IMG/VR virus record: IMGVR_UViG_3300022744_000022
Location: 1 to 64,000 of that record
DNA length: 64,000 nt
Strand: one strand, 5' to 3'
Each line of letters opens with the position of its first letter. Position 1 is the first letter of the stretch. Positions 1,850 through 62,582 of the stretch are shown here, piece after piece. The position numbers and the translations under genes are program-made. The notes below the pieces were generated by a model. The model searched no databases, was not told the DNA's origin, and was given only the letters and a program-made list of their open reading frames with translations.

Positions 1850-1859
1850 TTCTTCTAGT
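1850..1859 (+). promoter_or_regulatory. candidate phage late-promoter motif TTCTTCTAGT
   Basis: One of about 6 similar intergenic motifs (consensus TTCTYYTRDK), 16 nt upstream of ATG 1876. Confidence 0.4.
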
Positions 1860-1875
1860 GGGTTCCCTGTAGGGG

Positions 1876-2508
1876 ATGCCACCGCTCAAGAAGACACAGC
1901 AGCCGCGTCGCGTGGCTATGGTGACGTTTGGGACCGACGGGTTTGTGGACTACGTGCAGGTCCCGGACGGCCAGCGGTACATGCTGGGTCCGGTTTCGGT
2001 GCTCAAGTTGATCACCGGCTTGGTTCCCACGCGAACCGCTAGGGTGGCGCTCAAAGAATTCGTGTCTTCGCAGCAGGTGATGCTGCCTGTGGACCTCGAC
2101 CGGATGTGGGCAATGCTGCCCTTTCGGCGGGCTCGGTTTTCGTCCACTACTAACCCTCTTATGAGGGGCCCTGATCGTCAGGCTCAGATTGCTCGCTGTG
2201 GCGAGACGGAGAAACAAGCCGCCATGCTCAAGACCGCTTCCTACGATACGTTCACCGCCAATGTGGAACTCGCCGAAGACATCGTAGCCAAGGTTGCGGC
2301 GACGGATGAGGCGATTGAGCGTCTTAAGACCGCTGGTAAGCGGTTTGATTCGGTTCGTGCCAAGGCGGACCTTCACAAGATCGCGTCTCGGGTTGCTGAG
2401 ATTGCTCAGAACGTGGATCTCGCGCAACCGTGGGTTGGCAACGACCTGGCGGATCTCTCTAAGCAGGCGACTGAAATCCATGGGCTGTTCGAGCCTAAGG
2501 AAGTCTGA
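1876..2508 (+). CDS. hypothetical protein (210 aa), helical C-terminal half rich in K-x-A motifs
   Basis: ORF with AGGGG SD; codon usage like neighbouring genes. Confidence 0.85.
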   Translation: MPPLKKTQQPRRVAMVTFGTDGFVDYVQVPDGQRYMLGPVSVLKLITGLVPTRTARVALKEFVSSQQVMLPVDLDRMWAMLPFRRARFSSTTNPLMRGPDRQAQIARCGETEKQAAMLKTASYDTFTANVELAEDIVAKVAATDEAIERLKTAGKRFDSVRAKADLHKIASRVAEIAQNVDLAQPWVGNDLADLSKQATEIHGLFEPKEV

Positions 2509-2545
2509 AACCCGCCTCCCCTCTGACCGCTGAAGGAGTCCTGAA

Positions 2546-3256
2546 ATGGCGAACGTATCAACTTCCAACTACATCTACCGGATGGGCACGGCTCCGAATA
2601 CTCGGGCCGCTGTATCCCAGAAGAACAAGATCTACGGCTACACAGTCGGTGTGGGCGGCTTTCAGCAGCTTGGGGTGATCTCGGAGTTCGGCTTCGATGA
2701 GTCGCGTACCATCGATCCGATCCGTGGCGTCGGCTTTGGTGACCAGATCGCTGAGTTGGTGCCGTCAGTCACCGACCCGATGACCCTGACTTTGAACAAG
2801 ACGCTGCTCTACACGGCGAACTTGTATCAGATCCTGGGGTACAAGGGCGGCATCGATGGTTTGGCGCGTTCTCTGCGTCACCACCGTTGGCCCTTTGACA
2901 TCAAGCAGGAGTTGGTGTTCTCGGAGCTGGCGTCGCTCCAAGACCCTAATGGCGTTTCGGTCCAAGCGACGGTCACAACGGGTCCCACGAGTGCGGACAA
3001 CCCGATCGTTACCCCGCGTGCGCTGCTGACGTTCTACGAGGGTTGCTGGATGAACAGCTACTCGGCGAGCTTCACCAGTGACTCGGCGATGGTGGCTGAG
3101 AACTCGTCTGTGACGGTCACAGACATCATCGACGGCGTGAGCCAGTACGGTGAGTTCATCGATACGGGTCTTGCGCCGGTATCGGCGAATGGCGGTCCGG
3201 GCAAGGGCTTCTCCCTGAGGTTCGCCAACAACAGCAATTCGGTCGTTCCGGTCTGA
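2546..3256 (+). CDS. tail tube protein (contractile tail, gp19-like)
   Basis: AAGGAG SD, 236 aa. Beta-rich pattern GVISEFGFDESRTIDPIRGVGFGDQIAELVP...LTLNKTLLY and terminal FYEGCWMNSYSASF...VAENSSVTVTD resemble tube proteins. Lies upstream of chaperone-like genes and the tape measure. Confidence 0.75.
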   Translation: MANVSTSNYIYRMGTAPNTRAAVSQKNKIYGYTVGVGGFQQLGVISEFGFDESRTIDPIRGVGFGDQIAELVPSVTDPMTLTLNKTLLYTANLYQILGYKGGIDGLARSLRHHRWPFDIKQELVFSELASLQDPNGVSVQATVTTGPTSADNPIVTPRALLTFYEGCWMNSYSASFTSDSAMVAENSSVTVTDIIDGVSQYGEFIDTGLAPVSANGGPGKGFSLRFANNSNSVVPV

Positions 3257-3261
3257 CCAGG

Positions 3262-3283
3262 TAGCCGCCCTTTAGGGCGGCTA
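3262..3283 (+). terminator. GC-rich hairpin after the tube gene (terminator or mRNA-stabilising stem)
   Basis: TAGCCGCCC-TTTA-GGGCGGCTA, a perfect 9-bp stem 5 nt after the stop. No strong U-tract. Confidence 0.55.
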
Positions 3284-3291
3284 GTTCATGG

Positions 3292-3437
3292 GTGACAGCG
3301 GTTGAGCTAGATGTACATCAAACCAGATCAAACCAGATGTGAATTTTAGGTCGTAGGTAGTCGCACTAGACCCAGATGTAGATCCCGTTCGATTTAATTC
3401 AGCGCTGTCATCCTCACCAAACAAGATGAGGATGAGA
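3292..3437 (+). promoter_or_regulatory. structured 5' leader with competing stems, one occluding the SD of gene 3437
   Basis: GTGACAGCG(3292-3300) pairs with CGCTGTCAT(3403-3411). TCATCCTCA(3408-3416) pairs with TGAGGATGA(3427-3435, contains the SD). Internal ATCAAACCAG tandem repeat and AGATGT x3. Confidence 0.5.
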
Positions 3438-4498: not shown

Positions 4499-4501
4499 AG
4501 T

Positions 4502-5785
4502 ATGTCTGGTGCAGCTCAGACATACGAGGCAGAGCAGAAGAAGCTCCAGGCTGAGTACAGTGGGCAGCCTCAGGGGGACATCCACATCACGGTTCCGAAA
4601 GAACCGGAGGTCAATCCTGAGGTCTACAAGGACGTGGAACCCATGCTGTACCGTGGGTTCCTTACGGTACAGGCCGAGATCAACGGGGTCTACTTCGTAT
4701 TCAAAAGCTTGAACCACCACGAGCTGGAGCTACTCCGTTTCAGTGGTGGCTTTCGTGGGGATCGCGTCACCGCCAAGTTCTGGGACATTTTCCTGGCCTA
4801 CGGTGTGTTCATGGTCGATGGGGTCAACATCCTCGCTGAGCGAGACAGGTGGATCCCTAAGTTAGCCGAGACGTTTGGGGGCCTGCCTAAGGAAGCACGT
4901 TCAATGATCGTCCGGCATGTGGGCGAGGTGAACAGGCGGTCTTCTAACGCGGTGGCTCTCACGGAAGCGTATGCAATGGAGGCGATGTCTCGTTACCGTT
5001 GGATGCAGCTCAAGGGTCTGGATTTGTCTTCGCCTGCGGTGACTGGGATCGAGGGAACGCAGCGGTTGGGCCTCAACTGGGCGCAGCATCTTTGGCGGGC
5101 TCTAAACCATGCCGAGGATCGAAATGAGCAGCACGAACGGGAGTGGGAGAACGCCAAGTTCGTAGGGTCTTGCTTCGCGGGTAAGGGTATCTCGAAGGTC
5201 TACAACCAGGACAATGATCGTCGGCGTAAGGACAAGGAGGAGCGTCTTTCGCGTAAAGACAAGGTGCTTCGCGAGATCGTCCTGGGGGAGAAAACGGAAG
5301 CCCACACTCTTACGATTCCTGGGGCTGTGATCACAGCTCCGAGGACGGTCGAGGAGCTTGCGTCGCAGTTGGAGAAGGATCTCCGGGGCGACAAGGATTG
5401 GCACGACAAGGTGATCGAAGCCCATGAGACGAAGATCCGGAATCAATACGGTGAACGTCAGGCTCAGCTTGAGGTCGTGGCAAAGGAGAACGCGGTTCAA
5501 TTCGGCGACCGCAGTGTAGTGGGTGGTTCCGACGTACAGGGTCTGACGCCCGAAGAAGTTGCTGCGCGAGTGGAGAGGCGTAAGCAGCTTCAAGCGCAGG
5601 AAGCGGCTCGGAGACAGGTCCATCCCGAAATCCAGGATGAGAAGACGCAGAACTTCCTGAATAAGTGGGGCGTTCTCGGGCCTGAGGTTGCGACCGAAAT
5701 TTCTACTACAGATCAGGATATATCAGGGGCTGTTCCTTTACCGACAGTGCGGGCTCCGGCTACCCCGTTCCGAAGAAAGACGTGA
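4502..5785 (+). CDS. putative tail assembly chaperone 2 / pre-tape-measure protein
   Basis: Immediately before the tape measure. FVFKSLNHHEL...LAYGVFMVDG resembles the previous gene's N-terminal domain. Confidence 0.55.
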   Translation: MSGAAQTYEAEQKKLQAEYSGQPQGDIHITVPKEPEVNPEVYKDVEPMLYRGFLTVQAEINGVYFVFKSLNHHELELLRFSGGFRGDRVTAKFWDIFLAYGVFMVDGVNILAERDRWIPKLAETFGGLPKEARSMIVRHVGEVNRRSSNAVALTEAYAMEAMSRYRWMQLKGLDLSSPAVTGIEGTQRLGLNWAQHLWRALNHAEDRNEQHEREWENAKFVGSCFAGKGISKVYNQDNDRRRKDKEERLSRKDKVLREIVLGEKTEAHTLTIPGAVITAPRTVEELASQLEKDLRGDKDWHDKVIEAHETKIRNQYGERQAQLEVVAKENAVQFGDRSVVGGSDVQGLTPEEVAARVERRKQLQAQEAARRQVHPEIQDEKTQNFLNKWGVLGPEVATEISTTDQDISGAVPLPTVRAPATPFRRKT

Positions 5786-5788
5786 TCC

Positions 5789-8700: not shown

Positions 8701-9040
8701 GGACCCCATGAGCATGGTCAGCGGTATGTCGGCAGGGGTCTCGCAAACGGGCAGCACCGATGCAGCGTTTCAACTGCTGCGACCCCACGCCACAGGCGGC
8801 GTGGTGACGGGTATGTCCGGGAACATGGCGAAGGTCAACAGCTTCCCCCCAGCCCCTCCTGGTGAAGGTTGGACTTCTGTGGGTCGTGGGGAAACGATCA
8901 CCCCCGCTGGGGGTCGTGGCGGCGGTGGTGGGGGTGGCGTCAAGGTTGAGCTGGAGTTGAAGGGCGACTTACGGCGCTTCATTGACGCTCGTGTGGTTGA
9001 TGGTGCTGCACAGTTCGAGCGCAATAAGCGCCTTCGCTGA
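5789..9040 (+). CDS. tape measure protein (1083 aa, GTG start)
   Basis: Long Ala/Lys/Met-rich helical protein, hydrophobic stretch (APAISLMGTAMMSLVKMF), C-terminal HATGGVV...GEG...GETITP pattern common in tape measures, and the expected position. Confidence 0.85.
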   Translation: MASEKPEVVNFKFAVESKTAIAEATRFQKELTKRLKLVEKTEKDLNNGLTKYLYKMGRAKQVVGPTLQKELKSRKAIRDTIKNTASSLTQVTAVATKTSAVVEELKSRQLNAEKELAALQKEADAASRQLVEDKRKGLAVDAAAVDAAKSKVAAAKEGLADIKAVVKEQEAALKGAQDIVGVKKEELAALKEQQKASRASGMKESAGARADSSLEGIVKNLSTAVRESGEDLVKPFEAFARKDLAGVMEEGGTLAGKAFRKTLVMAQMGKAMKKDPSKAEGMGTVLKGVATMAGKMAPVLDILGKMAPAISLMGTAMMSLVKMFIDAEASATEFNKEILASSSSSGFMIDNMHDVGAAAADASKFLRASMPDIEDWRNVQRGVTKDMVASTTAALGAEGVSVTMLRKQLDGLASSTVDGAKDMQNLNDVTWMSTAFSRQFGVSLSEVTQLQGEMMTEMGANLTSVETQFQNMDRSAEQAGVASNKFFGIIRSFSSDMSLFTLRMEDLTKVMMVLGKTMSPRNAQKFLQTVTQQFKGASLMDRTRSVLLGGKEEMKGIAQEGAKGRTAALGVDLSRTVGRDISEEIKTLVAGGSSESNTREITAFLAQFGDKLTGAQREAVLDAARMQGKLNSDDTVDIASAIKDASPIDAIKMLQQISERRFGKPLEELTGIQRLAIEQMANINDEQIDQMYKMKAGLMQTQEDLIAKIGKYQAAIAGGATPADAKKAAGFTDAELTSLTNLGTSIDDQGAAATVRAKSAEDIWNSMDATQQELLKGVDETKAFQTQMGSLQTSIADKMAIVVDLLTTSIYKALMAMYDALIGLWDGFMGLWGDLGSGKIGAMLGLSGPGEKEKQRKANRFGADIDPAAEAARVAAKGQQTSAAESTALMSVDPGDASSQPIVEQQSATTESVDTVNKTLKRGIVQGRPTQAYNAATEDATLKAIRQGLFEYYLYSQLNPADVMSAMGQGMDPMSMVSGMSAGVSQTGSTDAAFQLLRPHATGGVVTGMSGNMAKVNSFPPAPPGEGWTSVGRGETITPAGGRGGGGGGGVKVELELKGDLRRFIDARVVDGAAQFERNKRLR

Positions 9041-9047
9041 GATCTAA

Positions 9048-17205: not shown

Positions 17206-17784
17206 ATGCCCTTGAATCCGCCAGCACTTGCGGCAGCGTTCCTCACCCCAAACCTGCTTTCCACAGGGAACATCGGGATGGGTGTGCCTAAATTCGCAAT
17301 GGGCGTTGCGGTGGGGGTGTGCCAGTACCTTACGGTACAAGCCAAGGTTGCGACGGTGGACGCTGGGGTCCTTGGTGTAGGGACCTCAATCATGCCGCTG
17401 CTTGTGGTCCCTACGTTGCTTCAAGGCGGTCTTTACGCTGGCTTTTCCTCCATGGGGATCTTGGGCCCCCTGTCCCCCTTGCTGATCACGGGTCTCACGA
17501 ACGGGCTTGTGACTGGTTGGACCGCCCTTGCGCTCTTGCAGACAAACCACCCGGGGATCGGTGTGGGGGCTGGGGTGGCGCGTATCACGGGCCCTTCTGC
17601 GGTTCCTGCGATGCTTGCTGGGTTTGCTTCAATGGGAATGACTGGTGATGGGCCGGTCAAGACTGCTACGGCGATCGGGATTGCCCTGGACATCACGTTT
17701 GCGGCTTTTGTGGAACCGATCCCAATCGTGGGCACGCCTTCCATTGTGGGTGGTGCAGGGGTTGGCTTCGGGTCGGTGATCTAA
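17206..17784 (+). CDS. hydrophobic Gly/Ala-rich virion protein (192 aa)
   Basis: Abuts the spike stop codon (TAG-ATG). Almost no charged residues. Confidence 0.75.
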   Translation: MPLNPPALAAAFLTPNLLSTGNIGMGVPKFAMGVAVGVCQYLTVQAKVATVDAGVLGVGTSIMPLLVVPTLLQGGLYAGFSSMGILGPLSPLLITGLTNGLVTGWTALALLQTNHPGIGVGAGVARITGPSAVPAMLAGFASMGMTGDGPVKTATAIGIALDITFAAFVEPIPIVGTPSIVGGAGVGFGSVI

Positions 17785-17786
17785 AG

Positions 17787-24178: not shown

Positions 24179-26344
24179 ATGGCCACCACCGCAAATTGGG
24201 AGTCGCTTTCAATCCAGATCCCTGGGCAGGATCTTCTGGAGAAGGCGAGGAACGTCCTAGAGACCTTGATGGTCTACCTGGAGGTTCTCAAGGCTATCCT
24301 CGAAACCGTAAAGGTCTTCCTGGTTGACTTCGGCAACCCGATCAAGGCGTTGGTCGAAGCGCTCATCCAGTTAATTATAGACCTGTTTGAGTCTCTCAAG
24401 CGCACGGGCATCTACGGTTGGTTTGACATCCCCAACCCGTTGGTCGATCCCAACTTCAATTTGCATGTCGGCGGGTACCAGGCGTTCACGACGCGCTTCA
24501 AGGCGGGGCTCTACGATTCTAGGGATCCGAACCGTCCGCAGCCGATCTCAGGCCTCACCAACAGCGGGTTCACTATCATTGTGGCTGACGCAGAGAGCCC
24601 CATGGCTCTGCTTAAGTTCATTCAGGTCTTGCTTCGCTTCCTGGGTAAGGAGTTCTTGACGCCGCAGTACGCGGCCCCCGCCAACTTCAAAGTGCTGCCT
24701 CTGGGTTCCAGCGGGGATCCCATCTTATCTGTTGTCAAGCTGTTCCAGGACCAACCTAAGTCAGTTGTGGTCGAGTGGTCACTACCTCCGGCTAAGAACC
24801 CCGGTGATCCAGGGTTCTCGGACCTGATCCAAGCCTTCTCAACGGACTTCATCCCCCCTCGGTTCCTGATCGAGAAGAGTGAGATCAACCCGGCTGTCGG
24901 CGAAGTCAGCGCGCAAGACATGGGCGACCCGGAAGCTGCGGGTCAGGTCGTTGAGACGCTGCCCACAGAGTTCAGGGCCCGAGGGCTTGGTGACAACATT
25001 GAGCGTAAGGTCAGGTTGAACGACCAGTACGGCGACCCGTTTCTCAAGTTCCAGAAGTACATCATCATCGATACCTCGAACAACACCTCAACGTTCTTGT
25101 TGGGGCAGCTCGGCACGTTCCGCTACATTGACAATGATGTAGAGCTGAACAAGACGTACTACTACCGAGTTCGTGCGTACAGCGGTGACTTGAAGGTTTC
25201 AGGCACGTCCCTGGCTTTCGAGACTGCCCCTAAGTTTGATTCGGTAAGCGGCAACTTTTTTATCGAGTGGCCTGGGGACGATCCTATCATGGGCAAGGCT
25301 TCCCCTGTTGCCCCCATCATGATTCCGGAGTACCCGGACAAGTTCGATGTGATCGAGAACTTGAGGCGTCTATTCCAGACGGCGTTCTCGCTCAACTTCC
25401 ACTTGCCGCTTCCGATTGATCCCGACACAGGGAAGCTGTTTGACCCTTTGCTTGATCAGTGGATCGGTGAGGGCTCTCTTACGTCGATGGCAGGGCCCCT
25501 CACGTCGTTTCAGGCGGTGCCCTTGGTGGGGGACGCCGTATCTAGCGTCACGGATGTGACGGCTCAGTTCCAGCCTTCCCCGGTAACGGGGAAGCTTCCT
25601 GTGCCCCCGTGGTGCGAGGCAGGTGTCCAACGGAACGCCTCTAGACTCGCAACTATTGTGGCGGGTGCGATGCTTGAGGCGAACTCAGCGGTAGCGTTCA
25701 AAGCGTTGATGGAAGGGCCTTACCCTAAAGGCACACCGAGTGTTCCTAAGTTGACCGCCACTACGATCTCGGAGCTGGTGTTCGAGATCACCAAGGTCCA
25801 GGATCCTCAGTTAGCGGGTCAAGGGGCGGTCCAGGCGGCTGGTGTGTTGTACGGGGGCGCGTTCCCCAACAAGCAGGTCCGCGAAAACGTGCTGGCGGCT
25901 GTGGAATTCTGCAAGTCGTTCACACTCGGAGGCACGCCTCCGGACTGGATCCAGGTCAGCTTCTTGCGGGACATCGTGCCCTGGTCGGGACAGTTGCTTT
26001 ACGACCTGTTGGCTAAGATGCAGGCGCTTTTGGATGCCTACAAGGGTGTGATTGACGAGATCAAGGCGTTCATCGACCTGATCATCCGGAAGATCGATAC
26101 GCTTGAACGCTTCTTGGAGTACCTGATCTCCATCCTGGACTTCATCGAGAGCTTGTCTCTTGGGTTCTACATCCTCTCGGTGCCGTCCACTGGCGGGGAC
26201 GTGAACGAGTGGGTGTCTATCATCGACAGTGCAGGGGGGACTAAGCCACCCAGCGGTCCGGGTGGGTACACGGCGGGTGTTGCGTTTGCTTACGTGGCTC
26301 CCGATGTGACCGCGTTTGCGGAGGCGTTTGGGCTGATCTTCTGA
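24179..26344 (+). CDS. virion protein with amphipathic helical termini and a central FN3/Ig-like domain
   Basis: YIDNDVELNKTYYYRVRAY is an FN3-like pattern. Long amphipathic helices at both ends. Confidence 0.75.
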   Translation: MATTANWESLSIQIPGQDLLEKARNVLETLMVYLEVLKAILETVKVFLVDFGNPIKALVEALIQLIIDLFESLKRTGIYGWFDIPNPLVDPNFNLHVGGYQAFTTRFKAGLYDSRDPNRPQPISGLTNSGFTIIVADAESPMALLKFIQVLLRFLGKEFLTPQYAAPANFKVLPLGSSGDPILSVVKLFQDQPKSVVVEWSLPPAKNPGDPGFSDLIQAFSTDFIPPRFLIEKSEINPAVGEVSAQDMGDPEAAGQVVETLPTEFRARGLGDNIERKVRLNDQYGDPFLKFQKYIIIDTSNNTSTFLLGQLGTFRYIDNDVELNKTYYYRVRAYSGDLKVSGTSLAFETAPKFDSVSGNFFIEWPGDDPIMGKASPVAPIMIPEYPDKFDVIENLRRLFQTAFSLNFHLPLPIDPDTGKLFDPLLDQWIGEGSLTSMAGPLTSFQAVPLVGDAVSSVTDVTAQFQPSPVTGKLPVPPWCEAGVQRNASRLATIVAGAMLEANSAVAFKALMEGPYPKGTPSVPKLTATTISELVFEITKVQDPQLAGQGAVQAAGVLYGGAFPNKQVRENVLAAVEFCKSFTLGGTPPDWIQVSFLRDIVPWSGQLLYDLLAKMQALLDAYKGVIDEIKAFIDLIIRKIDTLERFLEYLISILDFIESLSLGFYILSVPSTGGDVNEWVSIIDSAGGTKPPSGPGGYTAGVAFAYVAPDVTAFAEAFGLIF

Positions 26345-26352
26345 ACGCACTT

Positions 26353-26362
26353 TTCTCTTGTG
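26353..26362 (+). promoter_or_regulatory. candidate late-promoter motif TTCTCTTGTG
   Basis: Intergenic copy of TTCTYYTRDK, 22 nt before ATG 26385. Confidence 0.35.
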
Positions 26363-33201: not shown

Positions 33202-33220
33202 ATAGCCATAATAGCATATA

Positions 33221-33230
33221 AGTAGAAGAA
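33221..33230 (-). promoter_or_regulatory. candidate late-promoter motif TTCTTCTACT (minus strand) upstream of HNH
   Basis: Reverse complement of AGTAGAAGAA, 19 nt before the HNH ATG. Same consensus. Confidence 0.4.
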
Positions 33231-33254
33231 AGCTTCGTTAACTCGACATGTGCG

Positions 33255-34721
33255 GTGACTTCTGAGCACTACACATACCGGCGGGCCGCAGCGTCATCCT
33301 GGGATGCAGCGAAGCAGGCGCTCGACCAATTCAACGAGCTGTATCAGGAAGCACAGAAGCGCTTCAAGTCTGGTATAGGCCCTGACGACCCGGATGCGGA
33401 CGACGCCCTTCTGAAACGGTTTGCGTTCGTGCCAAGTCCGGCGGCCCCCAGCTTCCCTGGTTCCCCCTTCTATGAGTGGCTGTGGTCGGCGTTCTCTGCG
33501 GGAGACGTGCCAGATCCAGAGCAGGTTCGTCCTAAGGGGCGCATGATCGTGCAGATCATCGACGGGCAACGGGACATTCAGGACTTTCTCACTGCTCTAG
33601 ACGAATACCGAGATGCCTTGCAGACAGTGGTTGAGGCGGTTGCACCGGAGCACTTCAGCTACCAGGGGTTCAAGATCTCGAACCCCGACCGCCTCGGGGA
33701 CAAGCAGTGTCGCCGAGTTCTTGAAGGGGTGGACTACCTTGTTGCGCTGTTCAAGAAGCGTGGGGTCCAACCCCTGCTGCACGTCGGGGTGACAGAGGTG
33801 GCTATCGTCACGCAGGCGACCCTAGAAAGGTCTGGAGGTTCTGCTAACTCGGGCCTTGGTCTGTACTTCCCGAACACCCAGAGCATCATGCTGTCCGTGA
33901 GGGCCGTAGGGCTAGGAGTTGGCCGCTTCATGAAGTGGGTCAACGAGATCTTCTTGCATGAGTTCGGTCACTATGTACATCTGCATTACCTTCCGCGTGC
34001 AGCACGGGAAGCTTGGGATGCTTCGTGGGGCGGTGTGAAGGAACGGCAGGAGGCCTTGGAACAAGCTTTCAAGGCTATCTCCGCGACGGATCGGGCTAAG
34101 TTTTTTGACGCCCTGCACTTCGCCAAGTTCGATCCATCGCGGGCTGCCAAACGTTTGGATCCTGTGTCTAGGGTGAAATTTGGGGTTTGGCTCCGAAACC
34201 CGCTTGTTGGGGATCCGCTAATTACGGACAAGCAGTTCCGCTTGACCAAGGCGGGTCAGTACCTGGCCCTGTTCTACTCGGATCGTGAGCGGTTCATGCG
34301 TGAGAACTACGATTGGATGCCCGTCGGATCCGATGAGTACAACCGGCAGGTTGAGGTATCCAGCAAGCGTTTTCAAGACAAGCTGGGCCTTCTGTGGGAC
34401 GGCAAGCAGCCCATCCCGGCCGCAGCCGTTGAGGAGCTGACCAAGGCGGACCCTTCGATGCAGAAGGCGGTGGAGGAAGCACTGGATCAGCTCGAAATTG
34501 TCTCCGACTACGGCCGTAAGGACGAGAAGGAAGACTTTGCTGAGAGCTTCGTGGCGTTCGTTGGCGCACCTGAGAAGCTCACGTCTACGGCGAAGTACCG
34601 GATGCAGCGGACGCTATGGCTGTCCGATTTCTACAGCAAACCCGTGATGCGGCTTGCCGGTGAGAAAGATTCTCTAACCCAGCATGTTGTGAGCCGCTAC
34701 CTCCATGCTCGTCAACAGTAA
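33255..34721 (+). CDS. zinc metallopeptidase (HEXXH + distal EDFAESF; lethal-factor-like gluzincin)
   Basis: GLYFPNTQSIML...IFLHEFGHYVH (about 33957-33971) and SDYGRKDEKEDFAESF (about 34530). Confidence 0.75.
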   Translation: MTSEHYTYRRAAASSWDAAKQALDQFNELYQEAQKRFKSGIGPDDPDADDALLKRFAFVPSPAAPSFPGSPFYEWLWSAFSAGDVPDPEQVRPKGRMIVQIIDGQRDIQDFLTALDEYRDALQTVVEAVAPEHFSYQGFKISNPDRLGDKQCRRVLEGVDYLVALFKKRGVQPLLHVGVTEVAIVTQATLERSGGSANSGLGLYFPNTQSIMLSVRAVGLGVGRFMKWVNEIFLHEFGHYVHLHYLPRAAREAWDASWGGVKERQEALEQAFKAISATDRAKFFDALHFAKFDPSRAAKRLDPVSRVKFGVWLRNPLVGDPLITDKQFRLTKAGQYLALFYSDRERFMRENYDWMPVGSDEYNRQVEVSSKRFQDKLGLLWDGKQPIPAAAVEELTKADPSMQKAVEEALDQLEIVSDYGRKDEKEDFAESFVAFVGAPEKLTSTAKYRMQRTLWLSDFYSKPVMRLAGEKDSLTQHVVSRYLHARQQ

Positions 34722-41527: not shown

Positions 41528-41538
41528 TCGCTGTGGTT

Positions 41539-41548
41539 TTCTCTTATG
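41539..41548 (+). promoter_or_regulatory. candidate late-promoter motif TTCTCTTATG followed by hairpin 41560-41584
   Basis: Intergenic consensus copy. TTGGCAAGGG...CCCTT-C-GCCAA stem ends in the AAGGAG SD. Confidence 0.4.
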
Positions 41549-42239: not shown

Positions 42240-42260
42240 AAATTAGGGTGAGGGCTAGGC

Positions 42261-50377: not shown

Positions 50378-50434
50378 GCAAGTTTTTATAGACTCTCTGC
50401 GGGTACTGCAACATTGCTTGGGAGGGTCTGTGAA

Positions 50435-50908: not shown

Positions 50909-53260
50909 TCACGGGTTCACCGCAATCGCGTGGATTGAGGTGCCCACCCAGTACAGGCACTCGTTCACAACCTGCATGGAGTTGAACGAGTAGGAACCCG
51001 AGCCAGTGAAGGTGTAGAGCGGAGTCACAGTGCCGCCGTTGACTGAGACCTTACGGACCTGCTTAGCGTTAGCATCCGCGAAGTAAACCGAGGTACCGTC
51101 GGTCGCGGTGGTGCTTGAGAACCCGTTGCCTGTCCCCACGAGCTTCTGCGCAGAACCGCCTGCCAAGGGCTTCTTCCACACGCCGCTGTTGGCAGGCTCG
51201 ATCCCAACGTAGAGGATGTAGTAGAGGTTGGTGCCATCCGTGGAGAGCGCTGTCATGGTGGTGGCAGCCGTGGGGAAGCTTGCCGAGACATAGCTCTCAA
51301 ACACCGTGGGGGTTCCGCCGTGGATCGGAACCCTAACGATGGGCTTTTGATTGACAGCGCCGTAGTTGATGTAGGTGGCGTAAAGGTACTGGCCATCCGT
51401 GACGAACGGTGCTCCGTACGTGTAAGAACCACCGAGCACGATGTCCGTAGTGGTGGTTGCCCGCCCCCAGTACGAGATGGTCGCGTTATCTTGGCGGCGA
51501 AAGAAGATGTCGGTTGCCGTGACGAGTAAGGCCCGGCCGTTGGCATTTCCGTAGGTGGTCAGGGTCCCGCCGCCGATGGGCTTCGAGAAAACCCCGGGGA
51601 ATGCTGGGATTTGAGCGTCACCGTCCGTGGTCCAGAACACATTGGAGCCCTGCACCGCGACACCACCGATGAACCCGGGCTGATTGGTGGCCAGCGAGAT
51701 GGTTGCACCGCCTGTGCGGGGCTGTTGATTCAGATTTCCGCCTTGGCTCCAGTAGATATTGTTGGCATCCACCGCGTAGTTGTTGGCCAGGATCCCCGAG
51801 TCGTAGACTCCACAAGTGCCTGACCCGCAGGCACCGCCGCAGCAACTGTGGCCGCACTGACCGCAGTTCGCTGAGTCCGAGGTGAGGTCAACCTCACAGC
51901 CGTTGGCCGGGTTGTTGTCGCAGTCATCGTGGTCAAGCTGACAGTCAAACGTGCAGGCACCTGCTTGGCAGTACGAGTCAGCACCCTGCACTGAGGGGCA
52001 GCCTTGAGCCGCTTGCCACTGACCGTTGCTTCCGCAGGTCTGGATCTGTTGCCCCGAGCACTGCTGAGTCCCGGGTTCGCAAACTCCCGTGCAAGCGCCC
52101 GCACTACACACGTACTGACAAGCCGAACCCGAGACCCACTGACCCGAACCATTGCAAGTTCGGGGGGTGTCCCCTTGGCAGCTCGTAGAATTCGGCGTGC
52201 AGCTTCCCGAGCAAACCCCTTCGCCACCGCACACGAAGCTACAAGCCGTCTCCGAGACCCACTGGCCCTGGGCATTGCAGCTCCGAGGCGTGAGCCCCTG
52301 GCAGTCCCGGTCCCCAGGGGTGCAGACACCTGAGCAGGTTCCGGCCCCGCATACGTACTGACAAGCCGAACCCGAGGTCCAGCTACCGCTGGAGTCGCAA
52401 GTCTGAGGAACCAGACCCGAGCACTGCTTGGCACTGGGGCTACACGACCCCGAGCACACCCCCTCTCCGCCGCAAACGTAAGGGCAAGCCGTTTCCGTGA
52501 CCCACTGAGCGGTCGCGTCACAGTGGCGAGGCACCAAGCCCGAGCAATCCCGGTCACCAGGGGTACAGACACCCGAGCACACGCCTTCACCGCCGCAGTA
52601 CAGCGAGCAGGCGGTTTCCTGTACCCACTGACCCGAGCTATCGCAGCTACGGGGGGTCAAGCCTTGGCAGTCCCGGTCGCCCGGTACGCATGCGCCCGTG
52701 CAGTCACCGGCACTGCAAACGAACGAGCAAGCGAGCCCTTGGACCCACTGGCCATTTGAGTTGCAGCTTCTCGGGTTAAGCCCCTGGCAATCCTTGTCTC
52801 CTGGATCGCAGACGCCCACGCATGCACCGGCTTGGCACACGTGGTCGCACACTTCCTGAGCTTCCCACTGCCCTGACACACAGGCGAACCTTTGAAGGCC
52901 CTCACACTTAGTACCGGGGCCTGAACCGGGGCACTCCGGGATCGTGGCATCCGATCCTGAGTCCGTGCCCGAGTCTACGGGGACGGTAGCATCGACCATC
53001 GCGGCGTCTTGACTACCCGCGTCCGTGATGCTGCCTGCGTCCACGCTGGCGGTCATGGCGTCCGCTTGGCTGCCGTCCTGGGGCGCTGCGTCCGAGACCG
53101 GCAGGCTGCCATCCTGAGGGCTCATCCCGTCCACGACGATTGAGTTACCGCCGTCCGTGAAGACACCCGGCATCGAATCCGTGCGGTCCACGATAGGGCT
53201 TCTATCCATCGAACACGCGGCCAAAAGCACGGCGAACACAACAACGAATTGCTTTTCCAT
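50909..53260 (-). CDS. myxobacterial-style lipoprotein: lipobox, D/A/S linker, 8 Cys-rich repeats, beta-propeller
   Basis: VLLAA|C lipobox. DAG/DSG linker. Repeats C.PG...C.G..P..C...GQW.....C...C..G.C. DCDNNPANGCEVDLTSDSANCGQCG. C-terminal AVDANNIYW / ATDGTSVYF propeller blades. Confidence 0.85.
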   Translation of the reverse strand: MEKQFVVVFAVLLAACSMDRSPIVDRTDSMPGVFTDGGNSIVVDGMSPQDGSLPVSDAAPQDGSQADAMTASVDAGSITDAGSQDAAMVDATVPVDSGTDSGSDATIPECPGSGPGTKCEGLQRFACVSGQWEAQEVCDHVCQAGACVGVCDPGDKDCQGLNPRSCNSNGQWVQGLACSFVCSAGDCTGACVPGDRDCQGLTPRSCDSSGQWVQETACSLYCGGEGVCSGVCTPGDRDCSGLVPRHCDATAQWVTETACPYVCGGEGVCSGSCSPSAKQCSGLVPQTCDSSGSWTSGSACQYVCGAGTCSGVCTPGDRDCQGLTPRSCNAQGQWVSETACSFVCGGEGVCSGSCTPNSTSCQGDTPRTCNGSGQWVSGSACQYVCSAGACTGVCEPGTQQCSGQQIQTCGSNGQWQAAQGCPSVQGADSYCQAGACTFDCQLDHDDCDNNPANGCEVDLTSDSANCGQCGHSCCGGACGSGTCGVYDSGILANNYAVDANNIYWSQGGNLNQQPRTGGATISLATNQPGFIGGVAVQGSNVFWTTDGDAQIPAFPGVFSKPIGGGTLTTYGNANGRALLVTATDIFFRRQDNATISYWGRATTTTDIVLGGSYTYGAPFVTDGQYLYATYINYGAVNQKPIVRVPIHGGTPTVFESYVSASFPTAATTMTALSTDGTNLYYILYVGIEPANSGVWKKPLAGGSAQKLVGTGNGFSSTTATDGTSVYFADANAKQVRKVSVNGGTVTPLYTFTGSGSYSFNSMQVVNECLYWVGTSIHAIAVNP
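51940..52933 (-). repeat. 8 tandem intragenic Cys-rich repeats (about 120-123 bp, 40-46 aa, 6 Cys each)
   Basis: Counted in the translation, e.g. CTPGDRDCQGLTPRSCNAQGQWVSETACSFVCGGEGVCSGS. Coordinates approximate. Confidence 0.85.
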
Positions 53261-53384
53261 GCAGGTACTACAAGTGGACGGCAGAAAACTCTAGTCGTCA
53301 AGCCGGTGTAACAGTGCTTTTTGGCGGTGGTGTAGGTGCGGGGTGGGGCCCGCTAAAGGCTTTGTACACTTCCCTTAGCAAGGG

Positions 53385-53654
53385 ATGCCGAAAGCCGAAA
53401 CTACCGGGGGACTCTTGAAGGGTTTTCGCTTGTCAGCGGGACTCACTCAAAAGGAGCTTGCCCTCAAGCTGGGGGTCAAGGCCGCCCACCTGTCCGAAGT
53501 CGAGAGTGGCCTGCGTAGGGTCAGTGTAGGGAGGGCGGTGCGCTGGGCTCAACTACTTGAGAGACCTGAACTGGAGTTCGTTCGCCTAGCTCTCCAGGAA
53601 GAACTGGACGCTGTTGGGGTCAGGATGACGGTGGAGGTCAAGGATGGGCGCTGA
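53385..53654 (+). CDS. XRE-family helix-turn-helix regulator
   Basis: LKGFRLSAGLTQKELALKLGVKAAHLSEVESGLRR. Confidence 0.9.
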   Translation: MPKAETTGGLLKGFRLSAGLTQKELALKLGVKAAHLSEVESGLRRVSVGRAVRWAQLLERPELEFVRLALQEELDAVGVRMTVEVKDGR

Positions 53655-54531
53655 TGGTGCGGGGCTGCCTAAAGGCTTCGTGTACAAGATTCAGAATACA
53701 TTGAACGGTAAAGTCTATATAGGCCAAACGACCCGAGGCATAGACGACCGTTGGCGGGAACATGTACGGAACAGCTACCGGGGTAAGTCTTCCCCACTTT
53801 GTGACGCTATTCGCGAATTCGGCCCGGCAACTTTTACGGTCCAAGAGTTGCCTCACACCAAGTCATTGCGCAGCGGAGAGTACGAGTGGATTAGGTACTA
53901 TAACAGTATGGATCCACGTTTTGGTTACAATGTTGCAGGCAGCGGATCAGAGCACTCCGAAGAGCGCCGACGGAAGATGTCCGTAGCCATGAAAAGAGTC
54001 TGGGCTGACCCTGAAACGCGAAACAAAATTACCAAGGCTATTCGTGGTGCGAACACCTCTGATGCAGTAAAAAAGAGGCGAACTAGGGGGCAACTTGTTC
54101 GGATGTCGCAGCAAGCTGAGAGATCAAAAATCGCTCTGTCTGTGACCGAATCATGGGCTGATCCTTTGACGGCACAACGTCACCGTTTGGCCATCGAAAA
54201 AATTAAGCCAGATCAATCCGATCGGATGCGGCAACGGATGTCAGATCCCGTTACGAAGGCTCAACTCGTGGCCGCCAGTAAACTGGCTTTAGCACACGCA
54301 GATGTGAAGGTTCGGCAGTCGGAACGGATGCGTCGTCGCATGGCAGATCCGAAGGTGAAGTTAGAACACGCCGCAAAGATGAAACTCGCTTGGGTAGACC
54401 CGGAGTCTCGATCCAAAAGGATTGCGGCTATGAAAGACGCACAGTCTGATCCAGCGCTGCGGGCACGTAAATCAGAGGCCATGAAGCGCACTTGGGCCAA
54501 GAAGAACGCTAAGTCGAGAAACTCCCTATAA
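53644..54531 (+). CDS. GIY-YIG homing endonuclease with C-terminal NUMOD3-like helical repeats
   Basis: FVYKIQNTLNGKVYIGQT...RWREH...EYEWI...GYNV. Repeated W/M-ADP helices (RKMSVAMKRVWADPE). Confidence 0.9.
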   Translation: MGADGAGLPKGFVYKIQNTLNGKVYIGQTTRGIDDRWREHVRNSYRGKSSPLCDAIREFGPATFTVQELPHTKSLRSGEYEWIRYYNSMDPRFGYNVAGSGSEHSEERRRKMSVAMKRVWADPETRNKITKAIRGANTSDAVKKRRTRGQLVRMSQQAERSKIALSVTESWADPLTAQRHRLAIEKIKPDQSDRMRQRMSDPVTKAQLVAASKLALAHADVKVRQSERMRRRMADPKVKLEHAAKMKLAWVDPESRSKRIAAMKDAQSDPALRARKSEAMKRTWAKKNAKSRNSL

Positions 54532-58939: not shown

Positions 58940-59185
58940 ATGCCGCTCATTCGTCGCAGCTACCTAGACCTCTCTCCTGAACAACGTCGTGAAGGTGCAA
59001 AGGTTGTGAGGGCTCGAATCACGGCTGCCTTGGGTAGCCCTGGTTTGGCACCTGATCAAATCCGTCAGCTCCAAGAGCAGATGCACAAGATCTCGATGTG
59101 GGAAGCCGGGACTGTAGGCCAAGCCTCACAGTCCGTAGATCAAGAATTGCTGACGAGTTTCGTGCGACGCTTTTCAGCGAACTAA
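58940..59185 (+). CDS. hypothetical protein (81 aa)
   Basis: GAGGGG SD, follows the previous stop by 3 nt. Confidence 0.6.
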   Translation: MPLIRRSYLDLSPEQRREGAKVVRARITAALGSPGLAPDQIRQLQEQMHKISMWEAGTVGQASQSVDQELLTSFVRRFSAN

Positions 59186-60932: not shown

Positions 60933-61870
60933 GCGCCCTCCTCGAACCAAGCGAACCACCCGAGTTTAAGCAAACGAGACGCTTCCTCCTGCACAACTTC
61001 CCAAGTTCCGTTGTTGCGGGTTTTTAGAATTAACCCCCGTCGAGCCAGAGAGGCGAGAGAGCTAGAGAGGCTGATACCTGGTTTTTGAAGGGCTGCTGCC
61101 AGTTCACTAGTAGTAAACGTGCTAGACTTCACGTTGAGGATGTACAGCACAATTCGCGGGTCTTGTTTGGTGCGCGGGATGGGGTCCGGTGTTCCCGTCT
61201 TAGTTGTCCTAACCCAACGGTTGTCGATGCGGGTCACCCAACCCCAACGGTGGAGATTGGTCAGAGAGCTGCTGATTTTACCTACACCCACTCCCAGGTG
61301 CCCCGCCAGAGACTGACGGTCGATGCCTTCCGGGAAGGTGTCGAGCGCACTAAGGATGCGATCGGTAAAAGGGGATTCGCGGGTCTCCGACCGTATGCCG
61401 ATTGTGTCGGCAGAAATGGGCTTTGGGGCCTCCAGCAGACCCATCTCTGCCAGTAGACGCCCGGCTGGGCTTTCCAGCAGCCCCAGCTCTTCCAGCAGCT
61501 TCTCGGCAACTTGCATCGGGCAGGAAGGGTCGTTCGGTGGTGGGACCGCAGGGTCGTTCGGTGGTGGGACCGCAGCGTCGTTCGGTGGTGGGACCGCAGC
61601 GTCGTTCAAGATCTCAAGAGCGAGGGCCAAGCCGTCCGCTTCTCGCAGAGCTTCGGAGATGTCCAGTAAAAGATCTGAGGGGGCCGAGGGGAGGAAGCGG
61701 CGCAGCTTCAGCTCTGCTTCGACAGCCATTTCACAAGCGGTGTAATAGTTGCTGCCTGCTGCCAGCAGCTCTTTTGCGAGTGCAAGGAGGGCAGGGTTAG
61801 GCGTGGCTCCAAGGGACATGCAAGTACAGAGGTACACCAGGTAACGTCGTCGCGACAAGTCCAATGGCAC
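60929..61870 (-). CDS. protein with two C-terminal winged-helix-like domains and a PPPND repeat linker (start 61870 or 61819)
   Basis: IDRQSLAGHLGVGVGKISSSLTNLHRWGWV and FTTSELAAALQKPGISLSSSLASLARRGLI wHTH patterns. Confidence 0.7.
   Translation of the reverse strand: MPLDLSRRRYLVYLCTCMSLGATPNPALLALAKELLAAGSNYYTACEMAVEAELKLRRFLPSAPSDLLLDISEALREADGLALALEILNDAAVPPPNDAAVPPPNDPAVPPPNDPSCPMQVAEKLLEELGLLESPAGRLLAEMGLLEAPKPISADTIGIRSETRESPFTDRILSALDTFPEGIDRQSLAGHLGVGVGKISSSLTNLHRWGWVTRIDNRWVRTTKTGTPDPIPRTKQDPRIVLYILNVKSSTFTTSELAAALQKPGISLSSSLASLARRGLILKTRNNGTWEVVQEEASRLLKLGWFAWFEEGA
61527..61607. repeat. 24-bp tandem repeat, about 3.4 copies (encodes [A/P]AVPPPND on the minus strand)
   Basis: G[G/C]GTCGTTCGGTGGTGGGACCGCA repeated head-to-tail with no spacers. 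Confidence 0.95.
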
Positions 61871-61888
61871 TCAGGAGTCTGTTTTTAC

Positions 61889-61921
61889 GCGGAAAGTTTC
61901 CGCAGTTTCCGCAGTTTGCGT
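61889..61921. promoter_or_regulatory. candidate operator: palindrome GCGGAAA-G-TTTCCGC plus 9-bp direct repeats AGTTTCCGC
   Basis: Read directly. Lies between divergently oriented genes. Confidence 0.45.
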
Positions 61922-62000
61922 GGTCTAGGCACTTATCAAGTCTGTGCCAGGCGTCTCTCAGAGTTTTTGGAGGGGGTTTCGGCGGGTGTAGCTCAGGGGC

Positions 62001-62543
62001 ATGTGCCCGGGATCGTACCGTGTAGTGGTGAGTCGAGATCTCTTACGACAGACGGATGAACCGTGGTCTGGTTTGGAGCTTCGCGACACGCTGCTGATCT
62101 TGACTTCGAGCAGAGTGCTGTATGGCTTTTTGTTTCGGGTGCCTCTCCGCGAGGACACTGTTGCCGATCAAATCGCAAAGACGGGCAGCGGTGCTTTGGC
62201 GATCGATGCTTGTCGCGTGCTGGGGTCGGGACGCTGGCCGCCAAACCTTTTGCTGGTGCATCACACAACTTGTGGGTCTCAACCTGAGCAATGCCACCCG
62301 ACTTGTCCGGTTCGTAAGCTTGACGCTCAAAGCGGCGTCATAACGAGCGGAAAGGTCGCACCCCACCATCGCCGTAATAACACTATGAACCCAGCAGACG
62401 GCGGGTATCACGGCCACTTTGGGGACTCGCAACTCATCGGGTATGGTGACTCCGGGGGTGCGTCACGGTTTTACCCTCAGTTTAGATCTTTGGTTGAGTG
62501 TGTGACCTGGTTGCAAACTTTGGTGGCTACGCCGCGCGTCTAG
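62001..62543 (+). pseudogene. DNA methyltransferase-like remnant lacking catalytic and SAM-binding motifs
   Basis: LELRD..., PLREDTVADQIAKTGSGALAIDACRV, GRWPPNLLL, CPV..LDAQSG and GDSGGASRFY match the middle of phage N4/N6 MTases. No DPPY or FxGxG. Confidence 0.55.
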
Positions 62544-62546
62544 GCT

Positions 62547-62582
62547 TCACTTTCTCCTAATCAAATGTGGTTAGGGAGGTGT
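62547..62582 (+). promoter_or_regulatory. late-promoter-like motif TTCTCCTAAT forming the 5' arm of a hairpin that occludes the SD of the holin-like gene
   Basis: CTCC-TAATC pairs with GGTTA-G-GGAG, and CAC with GTG. Confidence 0.5.

What the first reader, a model, noticed from the sequence alone, without database searches (positions are those of the whole stretch)
1850..62561. Recurring intergenic motif TTCTYYTRDK: candidate phage late promoter
Seen: TTCTTCTAGT (1850), TTCTCTTGTG (26353), TTCTTCTACT (33221-33230, minus strand), TTCTCTTATG (41539), TTCTCCTAAT (62552), and weaker ACTCCCTATA (54521) and TTCCCTTAGC (53370). Each lies in or beside a short intergenic gap and ends within about 60 nt of a start codon, with no obvious sigma70 -35. 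Established: T4-type late promoters are single short boxes read by a phage sigma factor. Caveat: a pyrimidine run could instead be an anti-SD, but the HNH copy has no SD to pair with.
Basis: partly seen in the sequence, partly recalled or inferred. Interest (0 to 1): 0.6.

Follow-up and report, generated by a model that had tools for sequence, protein, structure and literature searches.

The report
Pyrimidine box and GGTGTA phage promoters

Summary
All seven sequences are at the stated coordinates. Only four fit the stated consensus, and over the whole window that consensus is at chance (6 hits vs 4.06 expected).

On the sense strand of intergenic gaps, the core TTCTYYT is over-represented in the window: 5 of 16 gap-strands vs 0.31 expected (a post hoc pattern). 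It is not over-represented in the other 144 kb of the contig (2 of 93 vs 1.57).

Four of the five core sites are kept at orthologous junctions in related phages:
- 41539: many relatives
- 26353: three relatives
- 1850 and 62552: the closest relative only

The box is therefore real, rare and limited to the structural module. A late-promoter role is possible but cannot be separated here from an RNA-level role such as a cis anti-SD.

The dominant promoter-like signal of this phage clade is YGGTGTAR. It lies 8-9 nt before ATG, a leaderless geometry, and in a subset AGAGTTT sits at a rigid spacing upstream. It is enriched about 12-15-fold upstream of genes in this contig and in G001, its spacing pattern is enriched in three further relatives, and it precedes non-structural genes. 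In the window it occurs only at 53261-53294(-), 53305, 53329 and 61985.

I found no phage RNA polymerase and no clear sigma factor in this 44%-complete fragment. No RNA-seq run holds the contig.

The parts
41537..41548 (+). Pyrimidine box TTTTCTCTTATG. It starts 9 nt after the stop codon of the 409-aa gene and lies about 46 nt before the probable true start (ATG 41595) of the 216-aa gene, which has its own AAGGAG SD.
   Evidence: Kept at the orthologous junction in G001, G003, G004, L049, L050, L051, L052 and L057. The core CTTAT is invariant among diverged flanks. No consensus RNA structure was found.
26351..26362 (+). Pyrimidine box TTTTCTCTTGTG. It starts 6 nt after the stop codon of the 721-aa gene and ends 22 nt before ATG 26385 (243-aa gene).
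   Evidence: The identical 12-mer is present in L001/L002, and TTCTCTTGTC in G004. It is absent from G001-G003, which have short SD-type gaps instead. A weak hairpin at 26324-26348 precedes it, but terminator-like hits in this region are at chance level.
1850..1859 (+). Pyrimidine box TTCTTCTAGT in the 28-nt gap before the 210-aa gene (ATG 1876).
   Evidence: The closest relative G005 has CTTCTACTAGTG at the same place. In G001 the two genes overlap and there is no gap.
62551..62561 (+). Pyrimidine box TTTCTCCTAAT, about 25 nt before the probable true start (ATG 62586), which is preceded by the SD GGGAGGTG.
   Evidence: G005 has TTTCCTCCTATAT at the orthologous place, followed by GAGAGGTG and a GTG start. 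There is no ortholog in G001.
33221..33230 (-). TTCTTCTACT in the 53-nt gap before the HNH endonuclease gene (32539-33201, minus strand).
   Evidence: The HNH identity comes from PHROG matches. The HNH gene and the 488-aa ORF form an insertion absent from G001-G004, so conservation cannot be tested.
54523..54531 (+). TCCCTATAA, a separate conserved element about 59 nt before the probable true start (ATG 54590) of the 1464-aa tail-fibre-like gene. It overlaps the stop codon of the inserted GIY-YIG gene.
   Evidence: G001 has TCCCTATAAT about 57 nt before its ortholog's ATG. It does not recur elsewhere.
53370..53379 (+). TTCCCTTAGC before the 89-aa ORF of the GIY-YIG insertion. There is no support for it as a box.
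   Evidence: There is no ortholog in G001. The same gap carries two GGTGTAR boxes upstream, at 53305 and 53329.
53261..53294 (-). Bipartite promoter-like site with CTAGAGTTTT upstream of TTGTAGTA (AGAGTT-N13-TGTAG), followed by 5 nt and then ATG 53260 of the 783-aa gene. This is leaderless geometry.
   Evidence: G001 has the same architecture before its ortholog. It is one of 11 such sites in the contig with a rigid 25-nt AGAGTT..TGTAR span, vs 0 in the reversed control.
53305..53335 (+). Two GGTGTAR boxes (53305-53311 and 53329-53335) on the plus strand of the divergent gap, 50-74 nt before ATG 53385.
   Evidence: GGTGTA on sense gap-strands in the window: 3 observed vs 0.38 expected.
61984..62003 (+). 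GGGTGTAG box, then 9 nt, then ATG 62001 (180-aa gene). This is the single-box type with leaderless geometry.

Best explanation
The window is the tail/baseplate end of a 208-kb fragment, about 44% complete, of a 400-500-kb uncultured freshwater phage. Two different upstream signals are present.

(1) The clade's main promoter-like element is YGGTGTAR. It resembles a -10 box (TGTART, or TA-R). It ends 8-9 nt before ATG in the single-box type and 7 nt before ATG in a bipartite type that also carries (CT)AGAGTTT at a rigid 13-nt spacing upstream. Transcripts would therefore start at, or within 1-2 nt of, the start codon, that is, leaderless or with very short leaders. It precedes non-structural genes (helicase, AAA/ClpX, NUDIX and others) and is almost absent from the structural block.

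It occupies both native gaps of 40 nt or more inside the co-directional structural block, plus two shorter gaps, and sits just after the upstream stop codon. In most copies a short leader with its own GGAG-type SD follows.

My preferred reading is that the box marks internal transcript starts of a separate late class, with the TA acting as the start of a -10-like element and the pyrimidine run as its class-specific upstream part.

What is shown: where the motifs are, their spacing, their strand bias and their conservation.
What is inferred: that either motif is a promoter, that the mRNAs are leaderless, and the temporal classes.

My separate odds:
- GGTGTAR is a promoter element: about 0.85
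- Leaderless starts: about 0.6
- The pyrimidine box is a promoter: about 0.35-0.4
The overall confidence given is for the whole two-part statement.
For: GGTGTAR:
- GGTGTA is the top k-mer in positions -40 to -1 of genes: 40 observed vs 2.6 expected in this contig, and 66 vs 5.5 in the complete relative G001, which has 48% GC.
- An ATG lies 8-9 nt after GGTGTAR in 25 of 81 copies here and 34 of 149 in G001. Five permuted control motifs give 0-4.
- The pattern with that spacing: 34 vs 7 control hits in G002, 31 vs 3 in G003, 40 vs 1 in G004, and 0 in the distant Tunturi_5.
- On sense gap-strands: 31 of 93 vs 2.5 expected in the rest of the contig, and 72 of 243 vs 6.6 in G001.
- The bipartite AGAGTT-N13-TGTAR form occurs 11 times here and 15 times in G001, vs 0 and 4 in controls. 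In G001 it is often followed by SD-led short leaders, so it acts on DNA and is not a ribosome signal.
- Back-to-back divergent copies and tandem copies exist.
- Genes behind it are non-structural.
- Only 3 of 58 sites fall in the window (Fisher P 0.008).
- A promoter box about 10 nt from the start codon is the published signature of leaderless transcription (PMC6028130).

Pyrimidine box:
- Sense-strand enrichment occurs in the window only.
- It is conserved at four junctions.
- No consensus RNA structure was found.
- The invariant CTTAT includes bases that SD pairing does not explain.
- A box lies in the gap before the antisense HNH gene, which cannot be read from the plus-strand operon and so needs a promoter of its own.
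Against: - There are no TSS data of any kind.
- No sigma factor or RNA polymerase was found that could read either motif in this fragment.
- The sigma-like family in relatives rests on weak Pfam region-2 hits, and its model was unusable at pLDDT 45.
- GGTGTAR lacks the A at -11 if aligned as TGTART.
- The pyrimidine box has only about five copies and its sequence varies between junctions.
- It is missing from the 180-nt regulatory gap that heads the structural block and from the same junction in G001-G003.
- It keeps no fixed distance to the start codon.
- Its window enrichment is post hoc.
- It is complementary to the SDs that follow it.
Confidence: 0.4

Rival explanations
1. The pyrimidine box acts in the mRNA as a cis anti-SD. 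It pairs with the GGAG-type SD or start region of the next gene and keeps it closed. A ribosome terminating at the upstream stop codon, 0-14 nt before the box, would open the pairing. This would give translational coupling across an unusually long spacer, or timed repression.
For: - The box resembles the CCUCCU end of 16S rRNA in several copies: 62552, its G005 ortholog, and L004.
- It is followed by a GGAG-type SD in all eight members of the 41539 family, in 62552 and its G005 ortholog, and at the 26385-type junction in L001 and L004.
- 85% of cells can pair with that SD.
- RNAfold pairs the box with the SD in G001 and L049.
- The box always starts 0-14 nt after the upstream stop codon.
- The same genome has an SD/AUG-burying hairpin before gene 3437 that is kept in four genomes.
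Against: - There is no covariation, and slid controls pair nearly as well at 56-83%.
- RNAalifold finds no consensus pair.
- The copy at 26353 has at most a weak G-rich stretch downstream and the copy at 33221 has no SD to pair with.
- The invariant TAT of CTTAT is not complementary to the SD.
- The HNH copy has no upstream co-directional gene.
Confidence: 0.27
2. There is no common function. The seven sites are a post hoc grouping of unrelated pyrimidine-rich stretches. The conservation seen reflects one or two specific local elements plus shared ancestry with close relatives.
For: - The full pattern is at chance in the window, the whole contig and G001.
- The core is not enriched in the other 144 kb.
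- After allowing for the number of patterns a reader could have chosen, the window enrichment is borderline.
- The sites split into sub-types (TTTTCTCTTRT; TTCTYCTA; TCCCTATAA).
- 1850 and 62552 are conserved only in the single closest relative.
Against: - The exact box is kept at the 41539 junction across relatives with only 65-84% protein identity, while the flanks are unalignable.
- Strand bias is 5 to 0 in the window and 15 to 7 in G001.
- Both native gaps of 40 nt or more inside the structural block carry the box, as do the 28-nt gap at 1848 and the 21-nt gap at 62544. The 37-nt gap at 2509, the 21-nt gap at 42240 and the 36-nt gap at 50378 do not.
Confidence: 0.2
3. The box is a transcription termination or antitermination signal. 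It would be either the U-tract of an intrinsic terminator ending the upstream unit, or a BoxA-like site (lambda boxA CGCTCTTA, recalled from memory) that loads host Nus factors for read-through of very long operons.
For: - The best terminator-like hit of region 24-43 kb is a hairpin at 26324-26348 directly followed by the box.
- L050 reads GCTCTTA and the others CTCTTA.
- Hairpins follow the box in several relatives.
Against: - Terminator-like hits are at chance level (20 vs 16.8 expected, and 18 vs 18.4).
- The upstream hairpin is not conserved; G001 has none next to the box.
- The downstream hairpins differ in sequence and position.
- The BoxA resemblance covers only 6-7 nt and comes from memory.
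- The sites lie 23 and 38 kb into the block, not near a promoter.
Confidence: 0.08

Closest known systems
T4-type late promoters (TATAAATA read by gp55 with gp33 and the sliding clamp; own knowledge)
   Same: A single short box with no -35 element, placed in front of structural genes, inside otherwise gap-free late gene arrays, sometimes before homing-endonuclease genes.
   Different: The sequence is unrelated (a pyrimidine run plus TA or TG, not TATAAATA). There are about five copies rather than dozens. No gp55-like sigma was found in the fragment. No TSS is known. The distance to start codons is variable.
Leaderless-mRNA promoters of Actinobacteria and Deinococcus (GeneMarkS-2 group C, PMC6028130) and of Thermus phage phiYS40 (own knowledge)
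   Same: GGTGTAR sits at a fixed distance of about 10 nt from ATG, with no SD in between. This is the described signature of leaderless transcription. It is used for the first genes of units and at divergent gaps.
   Different: The box is YGGTGTAR, not TANNNT. The conserved part lies upstream of and over the TA. It is shared by a phage clade with 48-57% GC rather than defined for a host. Transcript starts have not been mapped.
Bipartite phage middle or alternative-sigma promoters (T4 MotA-box promoters; sigma-B/F type GTTT-N12-14-GGGTAT; own knowledge)
   Same: The AGAGTTT-N13-TGTARTA sites have two boxes at a rigid, shorter-than-17-nt spacing. They precede clusters of small ORFs of unknown function.
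   Different: Neither box matches those consensus sequences. No activator or sigma has been identified. The resemblance is recalled from memory, not tested.
SD-sequestering leader hairpins and translational coupling (for example the MS2 coat-replicase pair; own knowledge)
   Same: A pyrimidine run lies upstream of a purine-rich SD, close behind the stop codon of the preceding gene. A clear example of this kind lies at 3408-3434 in the same window.

Membership tests
T4-type late promoter | Box TATAAATA (or a near variant) centred at -10 | tested here: not met
   The boxes read TTTTCTCTTRTG, TTCTYCTA.. and TCCCTATAA. Only the single 54523 element, with its G001 form TCCCTATAAT, is TATAA-like.
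T4-type late promoter | No -35 element; present before most late transcription units | tested here: inconclusive
   No sigma70-type -35/-10 pairs are found near the sites. However, the box is absent from the 180-nt gap heading the structural block and has only about five copies.
T4-type late promoter | Phage-encoded late sigma factor (gp55-like) | tested here: not met
   There is no Sigma70_r2 match, and only sub-threshold r4 matches, in the 208-kb fragment. The fragment is 44% complete. Relatives carry a weak sigma-like family whose model was unusable.
T4-type late promoter | Transcripts start a fixed 6-7 nt downstream of the box, late in infection | not testable with these tools
   No RNA run holds the contig, and neither the phage nor its host is cultured.
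Leaderless-type promoter (GeneMarkS-2 group C signature) | Conserved box at a fixed distance of about 10 nt from the start codon, with no SD between | tested here: met
This holds for GGTGTAR. ATG lies at 8-9 nt in 25 of 81 copies here and 34 of 149 in G001, vs 0-4 for permuted motifs, and the pattern is enriched in G002-G004. The reference is PMC6028130.
Leaderless-type promoter (GeneMarkS-2 group C signature) | Primary 5' end at the A of the start codon | not testable with these tools
   No RNA data.
Sigma70-family -10 element | T at -12, A at -11, T at -7 | tested here: inconclusive
   Aligned as TA-R-N-N-N, T-12 and A-11 are invariant but T-7 is weak. Aligned as TGTART, T-7 is 40 of 65 in G001 but -11 is G. 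The bipartite sites give TGTART plus 6 nt plus ATG, the canonical geometry for the second alignment.
Cis anti-SD hairpin | Complementarity to the downstream SD that is better than in shifted registers | tested here: not met
   85% of cells pair, vs 56-83% when the partner is slid by 1-3 columns.
Cis anti-SD hairpin | Compensatory changes that keep the pairing | tested here: not met
   0 pairs have changes on both sides. RNAalifold predicts no pair.
Intrinsic terminator | Stable GC-rich hairpin directly followed by a U-tract, conserved | tested here: not met
   One hairpin lies at 26324-26348, but hits are at chance level, and G001 has no adjacent hairpin at the 41539-type site.
phiKZ-like promoters of phage multisubunit RNA polymerase (TATG type, own knowledge) | Phage-encoded beta/beta-prime-like subunits | tested here: not met
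   There are no PF00562 or PF00623 matches in the contig or in three complete relatives, and no DFDGD-type motif. The PF00940 search was uninformative because its control was silent.

The most novel reading that the evidence does not exclude
A clade of 400-500-kb freshwater phages carries its own two-class transcription code. Early and middle genes would be read from YGGTGTAR boxes, with or without AGAGTTT at a rigid spacing, as mostly leaderless mRNAs. The tail module would use a separate pyrimidine-TA box. Both would be read by host core polymerase with phage-encoded, highly divergent sigma-like proteins, one family of which has an HNH-like insertion.
Probability: 0.2. Interest if true: 0.65.

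Novelty: new variant of a known kind. Interest (0 to 1): 0.45.

Why it matters
Huge phages are known almost only from metagenomes, and how they time their gene expression is largely unknown.

A clade-wide promoter-like motif with leaderless geometry gives three practical things:
- A way to correct start codons. Three starts in this window are probably miscalled.
- A way to split these genomes into temporal modules.
- A concrete DNA target to test against the clade's candidate sigma-like proteins.

The rarer pyrimidine box marks the only two gaps of 40 nt or more inside a 47-kb tail operon, so it is the natural place to look for late-gene control. Neither motif is shown to work; both are computational inferences.

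Tried and rejected
- Near-identity DNA search in the phage collection: no match.
- tRNA scan of the window: none found.
- RNA evidence: only two DNA metagenome runs hold the stretch and no RNA run does.
- Host clue from the ClpX-like gene: 43-50% identity to many phyla, so uninformative.
- Phage RNA polymerase: none found by Pfam beta or beta-prime domains or by a catalytic-motif regex. The T7-type family search had a silent control and proves nothing.
- Sigma factor: nothing in the fragment. A candidate family in relatives gave only an HNH-like match in the PDB sequence search. Its fold model had pLDDT 45, so no fold search was run.
- Terminator reading of the box: not conserved and at chance level.
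- Mini-ORF reading (the ATG or GTG inside the box as a start codon): rejected, because G003, L052 and G004 have ATA or ATC there.
- TCCCTATAA as a recurring late box: it does not recur.
- A GTARGG box directly in front of ATG: three copies only, at control level.
- Literature searches found no description of a GGTGTA promoter or of leaderless mRNAs in huge phages.

Full report
**What the window is**

The window is the first 64 kb of a single 208,486-bp IMG/VR virus contig with no end repeats, estimated to be 44% complete. It holds a long co-directional block of very large genes. PHROG and Pfam matches include baseplate hub, hub-lysozyme, Baseplate_J and tail fibre.

Only 940 nt of the window (1.5%) are intergenic.

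Related contigs include complete 398-512-kb genomes with direct terminal repeats (G001-G003). They are collinear with the window and share 44-77% protein identity. The DNA is held only by freshwater metagenome runs, and no RNA run holds it.

**Checking the observation**

The written consensus TTCTYYTRDK fits four of them. Its counts are at chance:
- Window: 6 hits vs 4.06 expected.
- Whole contig: 15 vs 13 in the reversed control.
- G001: 61 vs 74.

I then looked only at the sense strand of intergenic gaps. The core TTCTYYT occurs in 5 of 16 gap-strands of the window, vs 0.31 expected from shuffling each gap, and in none of the antisense strands. This number is inflated because the pattern was drawn from these sites.

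An independent test on the remaining 144 kb of the contig fails (2 of 93 vs 1.57 expected). G001 shows a two-fold excess on the sense strand only (15 of 243 vs 7.35 expected; antisense 7 vs 7.19).

**Conservation of the box**

The stronger evidence is comparative.

- **41539.** The box TTTTCTCTTATG is kept at the orthologous junction in G001, G003, G004 and five further contigs whose downstream protein is 65-84% identical. The flanks are unalignable and the core CTTAT is invariant.
- **26353.** The identical 12-mer is present in L001/L002, and TTCTCTTGTC in G004. Other relatives have CT-rich-plus-TA strings at that junction (L004, L011, L014, L015). G001-G003 have short SD-type gaps without it.
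- **1850 and 62552.** Both are kept, with one change or one indel, in the closest relative G005.
- **33221.** This site lies before an HNH endonuclease gene that is part of an insertion absent from the relatives, so it cannot be tested.
- **54521.** This is a different element, TCCCTATAA. G001 has it at the same distance from the true start of the 1464-aa gene, and it does not recur elsewhere.
- **53370.** No support.

The box always begins 0-14 nt after the upstream stop codon. It lies roughly 10-50 nt before the next start codon, which in most copies has its own GGAG-type SD.

Inside the 47-kb co-directional block from 3437 to 50905, the only two native gaps of 40 nt or more (at 26345 and 41528) are the two that carry the strong copies of the box. 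The 21-nt gap at 42240 and the 36-nt gap at 50378 carry no copy.

**The contig's dominant upstream signal**

An unbiased k-mer count of positions -40 to -1 of all called genes puts GGTGTA far ahead of everything else: 40 observed vs 2.6 expected. TTCT-type words do not appear among the top k-mers. The same holds in G001, whose GC content is 48% rather than 57%: 66 vs 5.5.

The motif keeps a fixed distance to start codons:
- An ATG follows GGTGTAR after 8-9 nt in 25 of 81 copies here and 34 of 149 in G001. Five permuted motifs give 0-4.
- With that spacing the pattern gives 34, 31 and 40 hits in G002, G003 and G004, vs 7, 3 and 1 for the backwards control. It is absent from the distant Acidobacteria phage Tunturi_5.
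- On sense gap-strands it occurs in 31 of 93 (2.5 expected) in the rest of the contig, and in 72 of 243 (6.6 expected) in G001.

A subset has (CT)AGAGTTT upstream, with a rigid 25-nt span from AGAGTT to TGTAR. There are 11 such sites here and 15 in G001, vs 0 and 4 in reversed controls.

In that subset the ATG usually follows TGTART after exactly 6 nt, which is the canonical distance from a -10 hexamer to +1. In G001 many of these sites are instead followed by an SD and a short leader. The element therefore works on DNA and is not a ribosome-binding signal. Divergent back-to-back pairs and tandem copies point the same way.

A promoter box about 10 nt from the start codon is the published signature of leaderless transcription (PMC6028130).

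Genes behind the motif are non-structural: SNF2 helicase, AAA ATPase, ClpX-like, DUF1848, NUDIX/NrtR and RlaP. Only 3 of 58 sites fall in the window, and two of those three lie inside genes.

In the window the motif marks the two divergent regulatory gaps:
- 53261-53294(-), which G001 also has before its ortholog
- 53305 and 53329 (+)
- 61985 (+)

**Who reads these motifs**

Consensus sigma70 promoters are depleted in the window.

I found no multisubunit RNA polymerase in the contig or in three complete relatives. The T7-type search was uninformative.

The fragment has no Sigma70 region 2 match and only sub-threshold region 4 matches. Three things were found in relatives:
- One clear ECF-like sigma in G002.
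- A conserved protein with two region-4-like helix-turn-helix units in G001, G003 and G004.
- A 330-420-aa family with a weak region-2 match and, in two members, an HNH-like insertion.

The fold model for the last family was too poor to use.

**What the pyrimidine box does**

Two readings survive.

*Promoter reading.* This fits the box's restriction to the structural module, its strand bias, its conservation as sequence rather than structure, the invariant TAT that SD pairing does not explain, and its presence before the antisense HNH gene, which cannot be read from the plus-strand operon. Under this reading the T-A would be the start of a -10-like element, as in GGTG-TA-R, and the pyrimidine run would be the class-specific part.

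Against it: the low copy number, the varying sequence, the absence from the 180-nt gap that heads the block, the loss at the same junction in G001-G003, and the lack of any TSS or sigma.

It fits the box's likeness to the CCUCCU end of 16S rRNA, its position just behind the upstream stop codon, the GGAG-type SD that follows it in most copies, and the existence of a clear SD/AUG-burying hairpin at 3408-3434 that is kept in four genomes.

Against it: pairing is no better than in shifted registers, and nothing covaries. Two copies also have no clear SD partner.

Terminator and BoxA-like readings are weak.

I put the promoter reading at about 0.35-0.4, the RNA reading at about 0.27, no common function at about 0.2, and the rest lower.

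**Comparison with known systems**

The box works at most like a T4 late promoter. It is not a member of that family, because the T4 box sequence and the gp55-type sigma were tested and not met.

GGTGTAR meets the positional criterion of leaderless-type promoters but has a different box. Its A-11/T-7 status depends on the alignment chosen. Literature searches found no earlier description.

**Verdict**

- The late-promoter interpretation is partly supported but unproven.
- The more solid result is a different, clade-wide promoter-like motif with leaderless geometry.

Noticed in passing
window 3257-3436: This 180-nt regulatory gap precedes the 353-aa gene that heads the structural block. It holds a GC hairpin at 3261-3284, three AGATGTRNAT boxes (3309, 3335, 3374; three of the four copies in the whole contig), and a hairpin at about 3408-3434 that buries the SD and the AUG. 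Similar box arrays and the same hairpin are present in G001-G003 (9 pairs, 1 compensatory).
   Followed up: partly
window 32539-34721: An HNH endonuclease gene (minus strand) and a 488-aa ORF sit between two baseplate/tail genes. They are absent from G001-G004, so this looks like a mobile insertion.
   Followed up: partly
window 53385-54531: An 89-aa ORF and a GIY-YIG homing-endonuclease gene are inserted in front of the 1464-aa tail-fibre-like gene and are absent from G001. The stop codon of the GIY-YIG gene overlaps the conserved TCCCTATAA element.
   Followed up: partly
window gene junctions, e.g. 5779-5788, 9039-9047, 17772-17786: Operon-internal start codons are preceded at 0-5 nt by GTGATCC, GAGATCT or GGTGATCT. 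These are complementary to the GAUCACC part of a 16S 3' end. This looks like a shifted SD used for coupled translation, while classical GGAGG is rare.
   Followed up: no
window 41589/41595, 54542/54590, 62565/62586: The longest-ORF starts are probably wrong. Relatives have a stop codon after the first ATG of the 216-aa gene. Alignments of the 1464-aa gene begin at residue 17. The 136-aa gene has a perfect SD before its second ATG, and its G005 ortholog starts there.
   Followed up: partly
G000 87565-87579 and 110457-110471; window 1863-1878: TTCTCGTARGGC directly followed by ATG is nearly identical before two unrelated genes outside the window. A similar string (TTCCCTGTAGGGG plus ATG) precedes gene 1876. 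There are three copies only, and the meaning is unknown.
   Followed up: partly
window 76-1053 and L037 (G001 242039-246352): The window starts inside a UvrD-like helicase gene. The G001 ortholog (1437 aa) carries an intein (Intein_splicing and Hint matches).
   Followed up: no
L020, L021, L024 (G003, G001, G002): This is a conserved 330-420-aa family with a weak sigma region-2 match and a C-terminal helix-turn-helix. Two members carry an HNH-like insertion in the middle. It is a candidate phage sigma, and it is not present in the 208-kb fragment.
   Followed up: partly
window 50909-53260 (-): A 783-aa gene of unknown function lies on the opposite strand inside the structural block. It is driven by the early-type bipartite box. 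Both the gene and the box are kept in G001.
   Followed up: no
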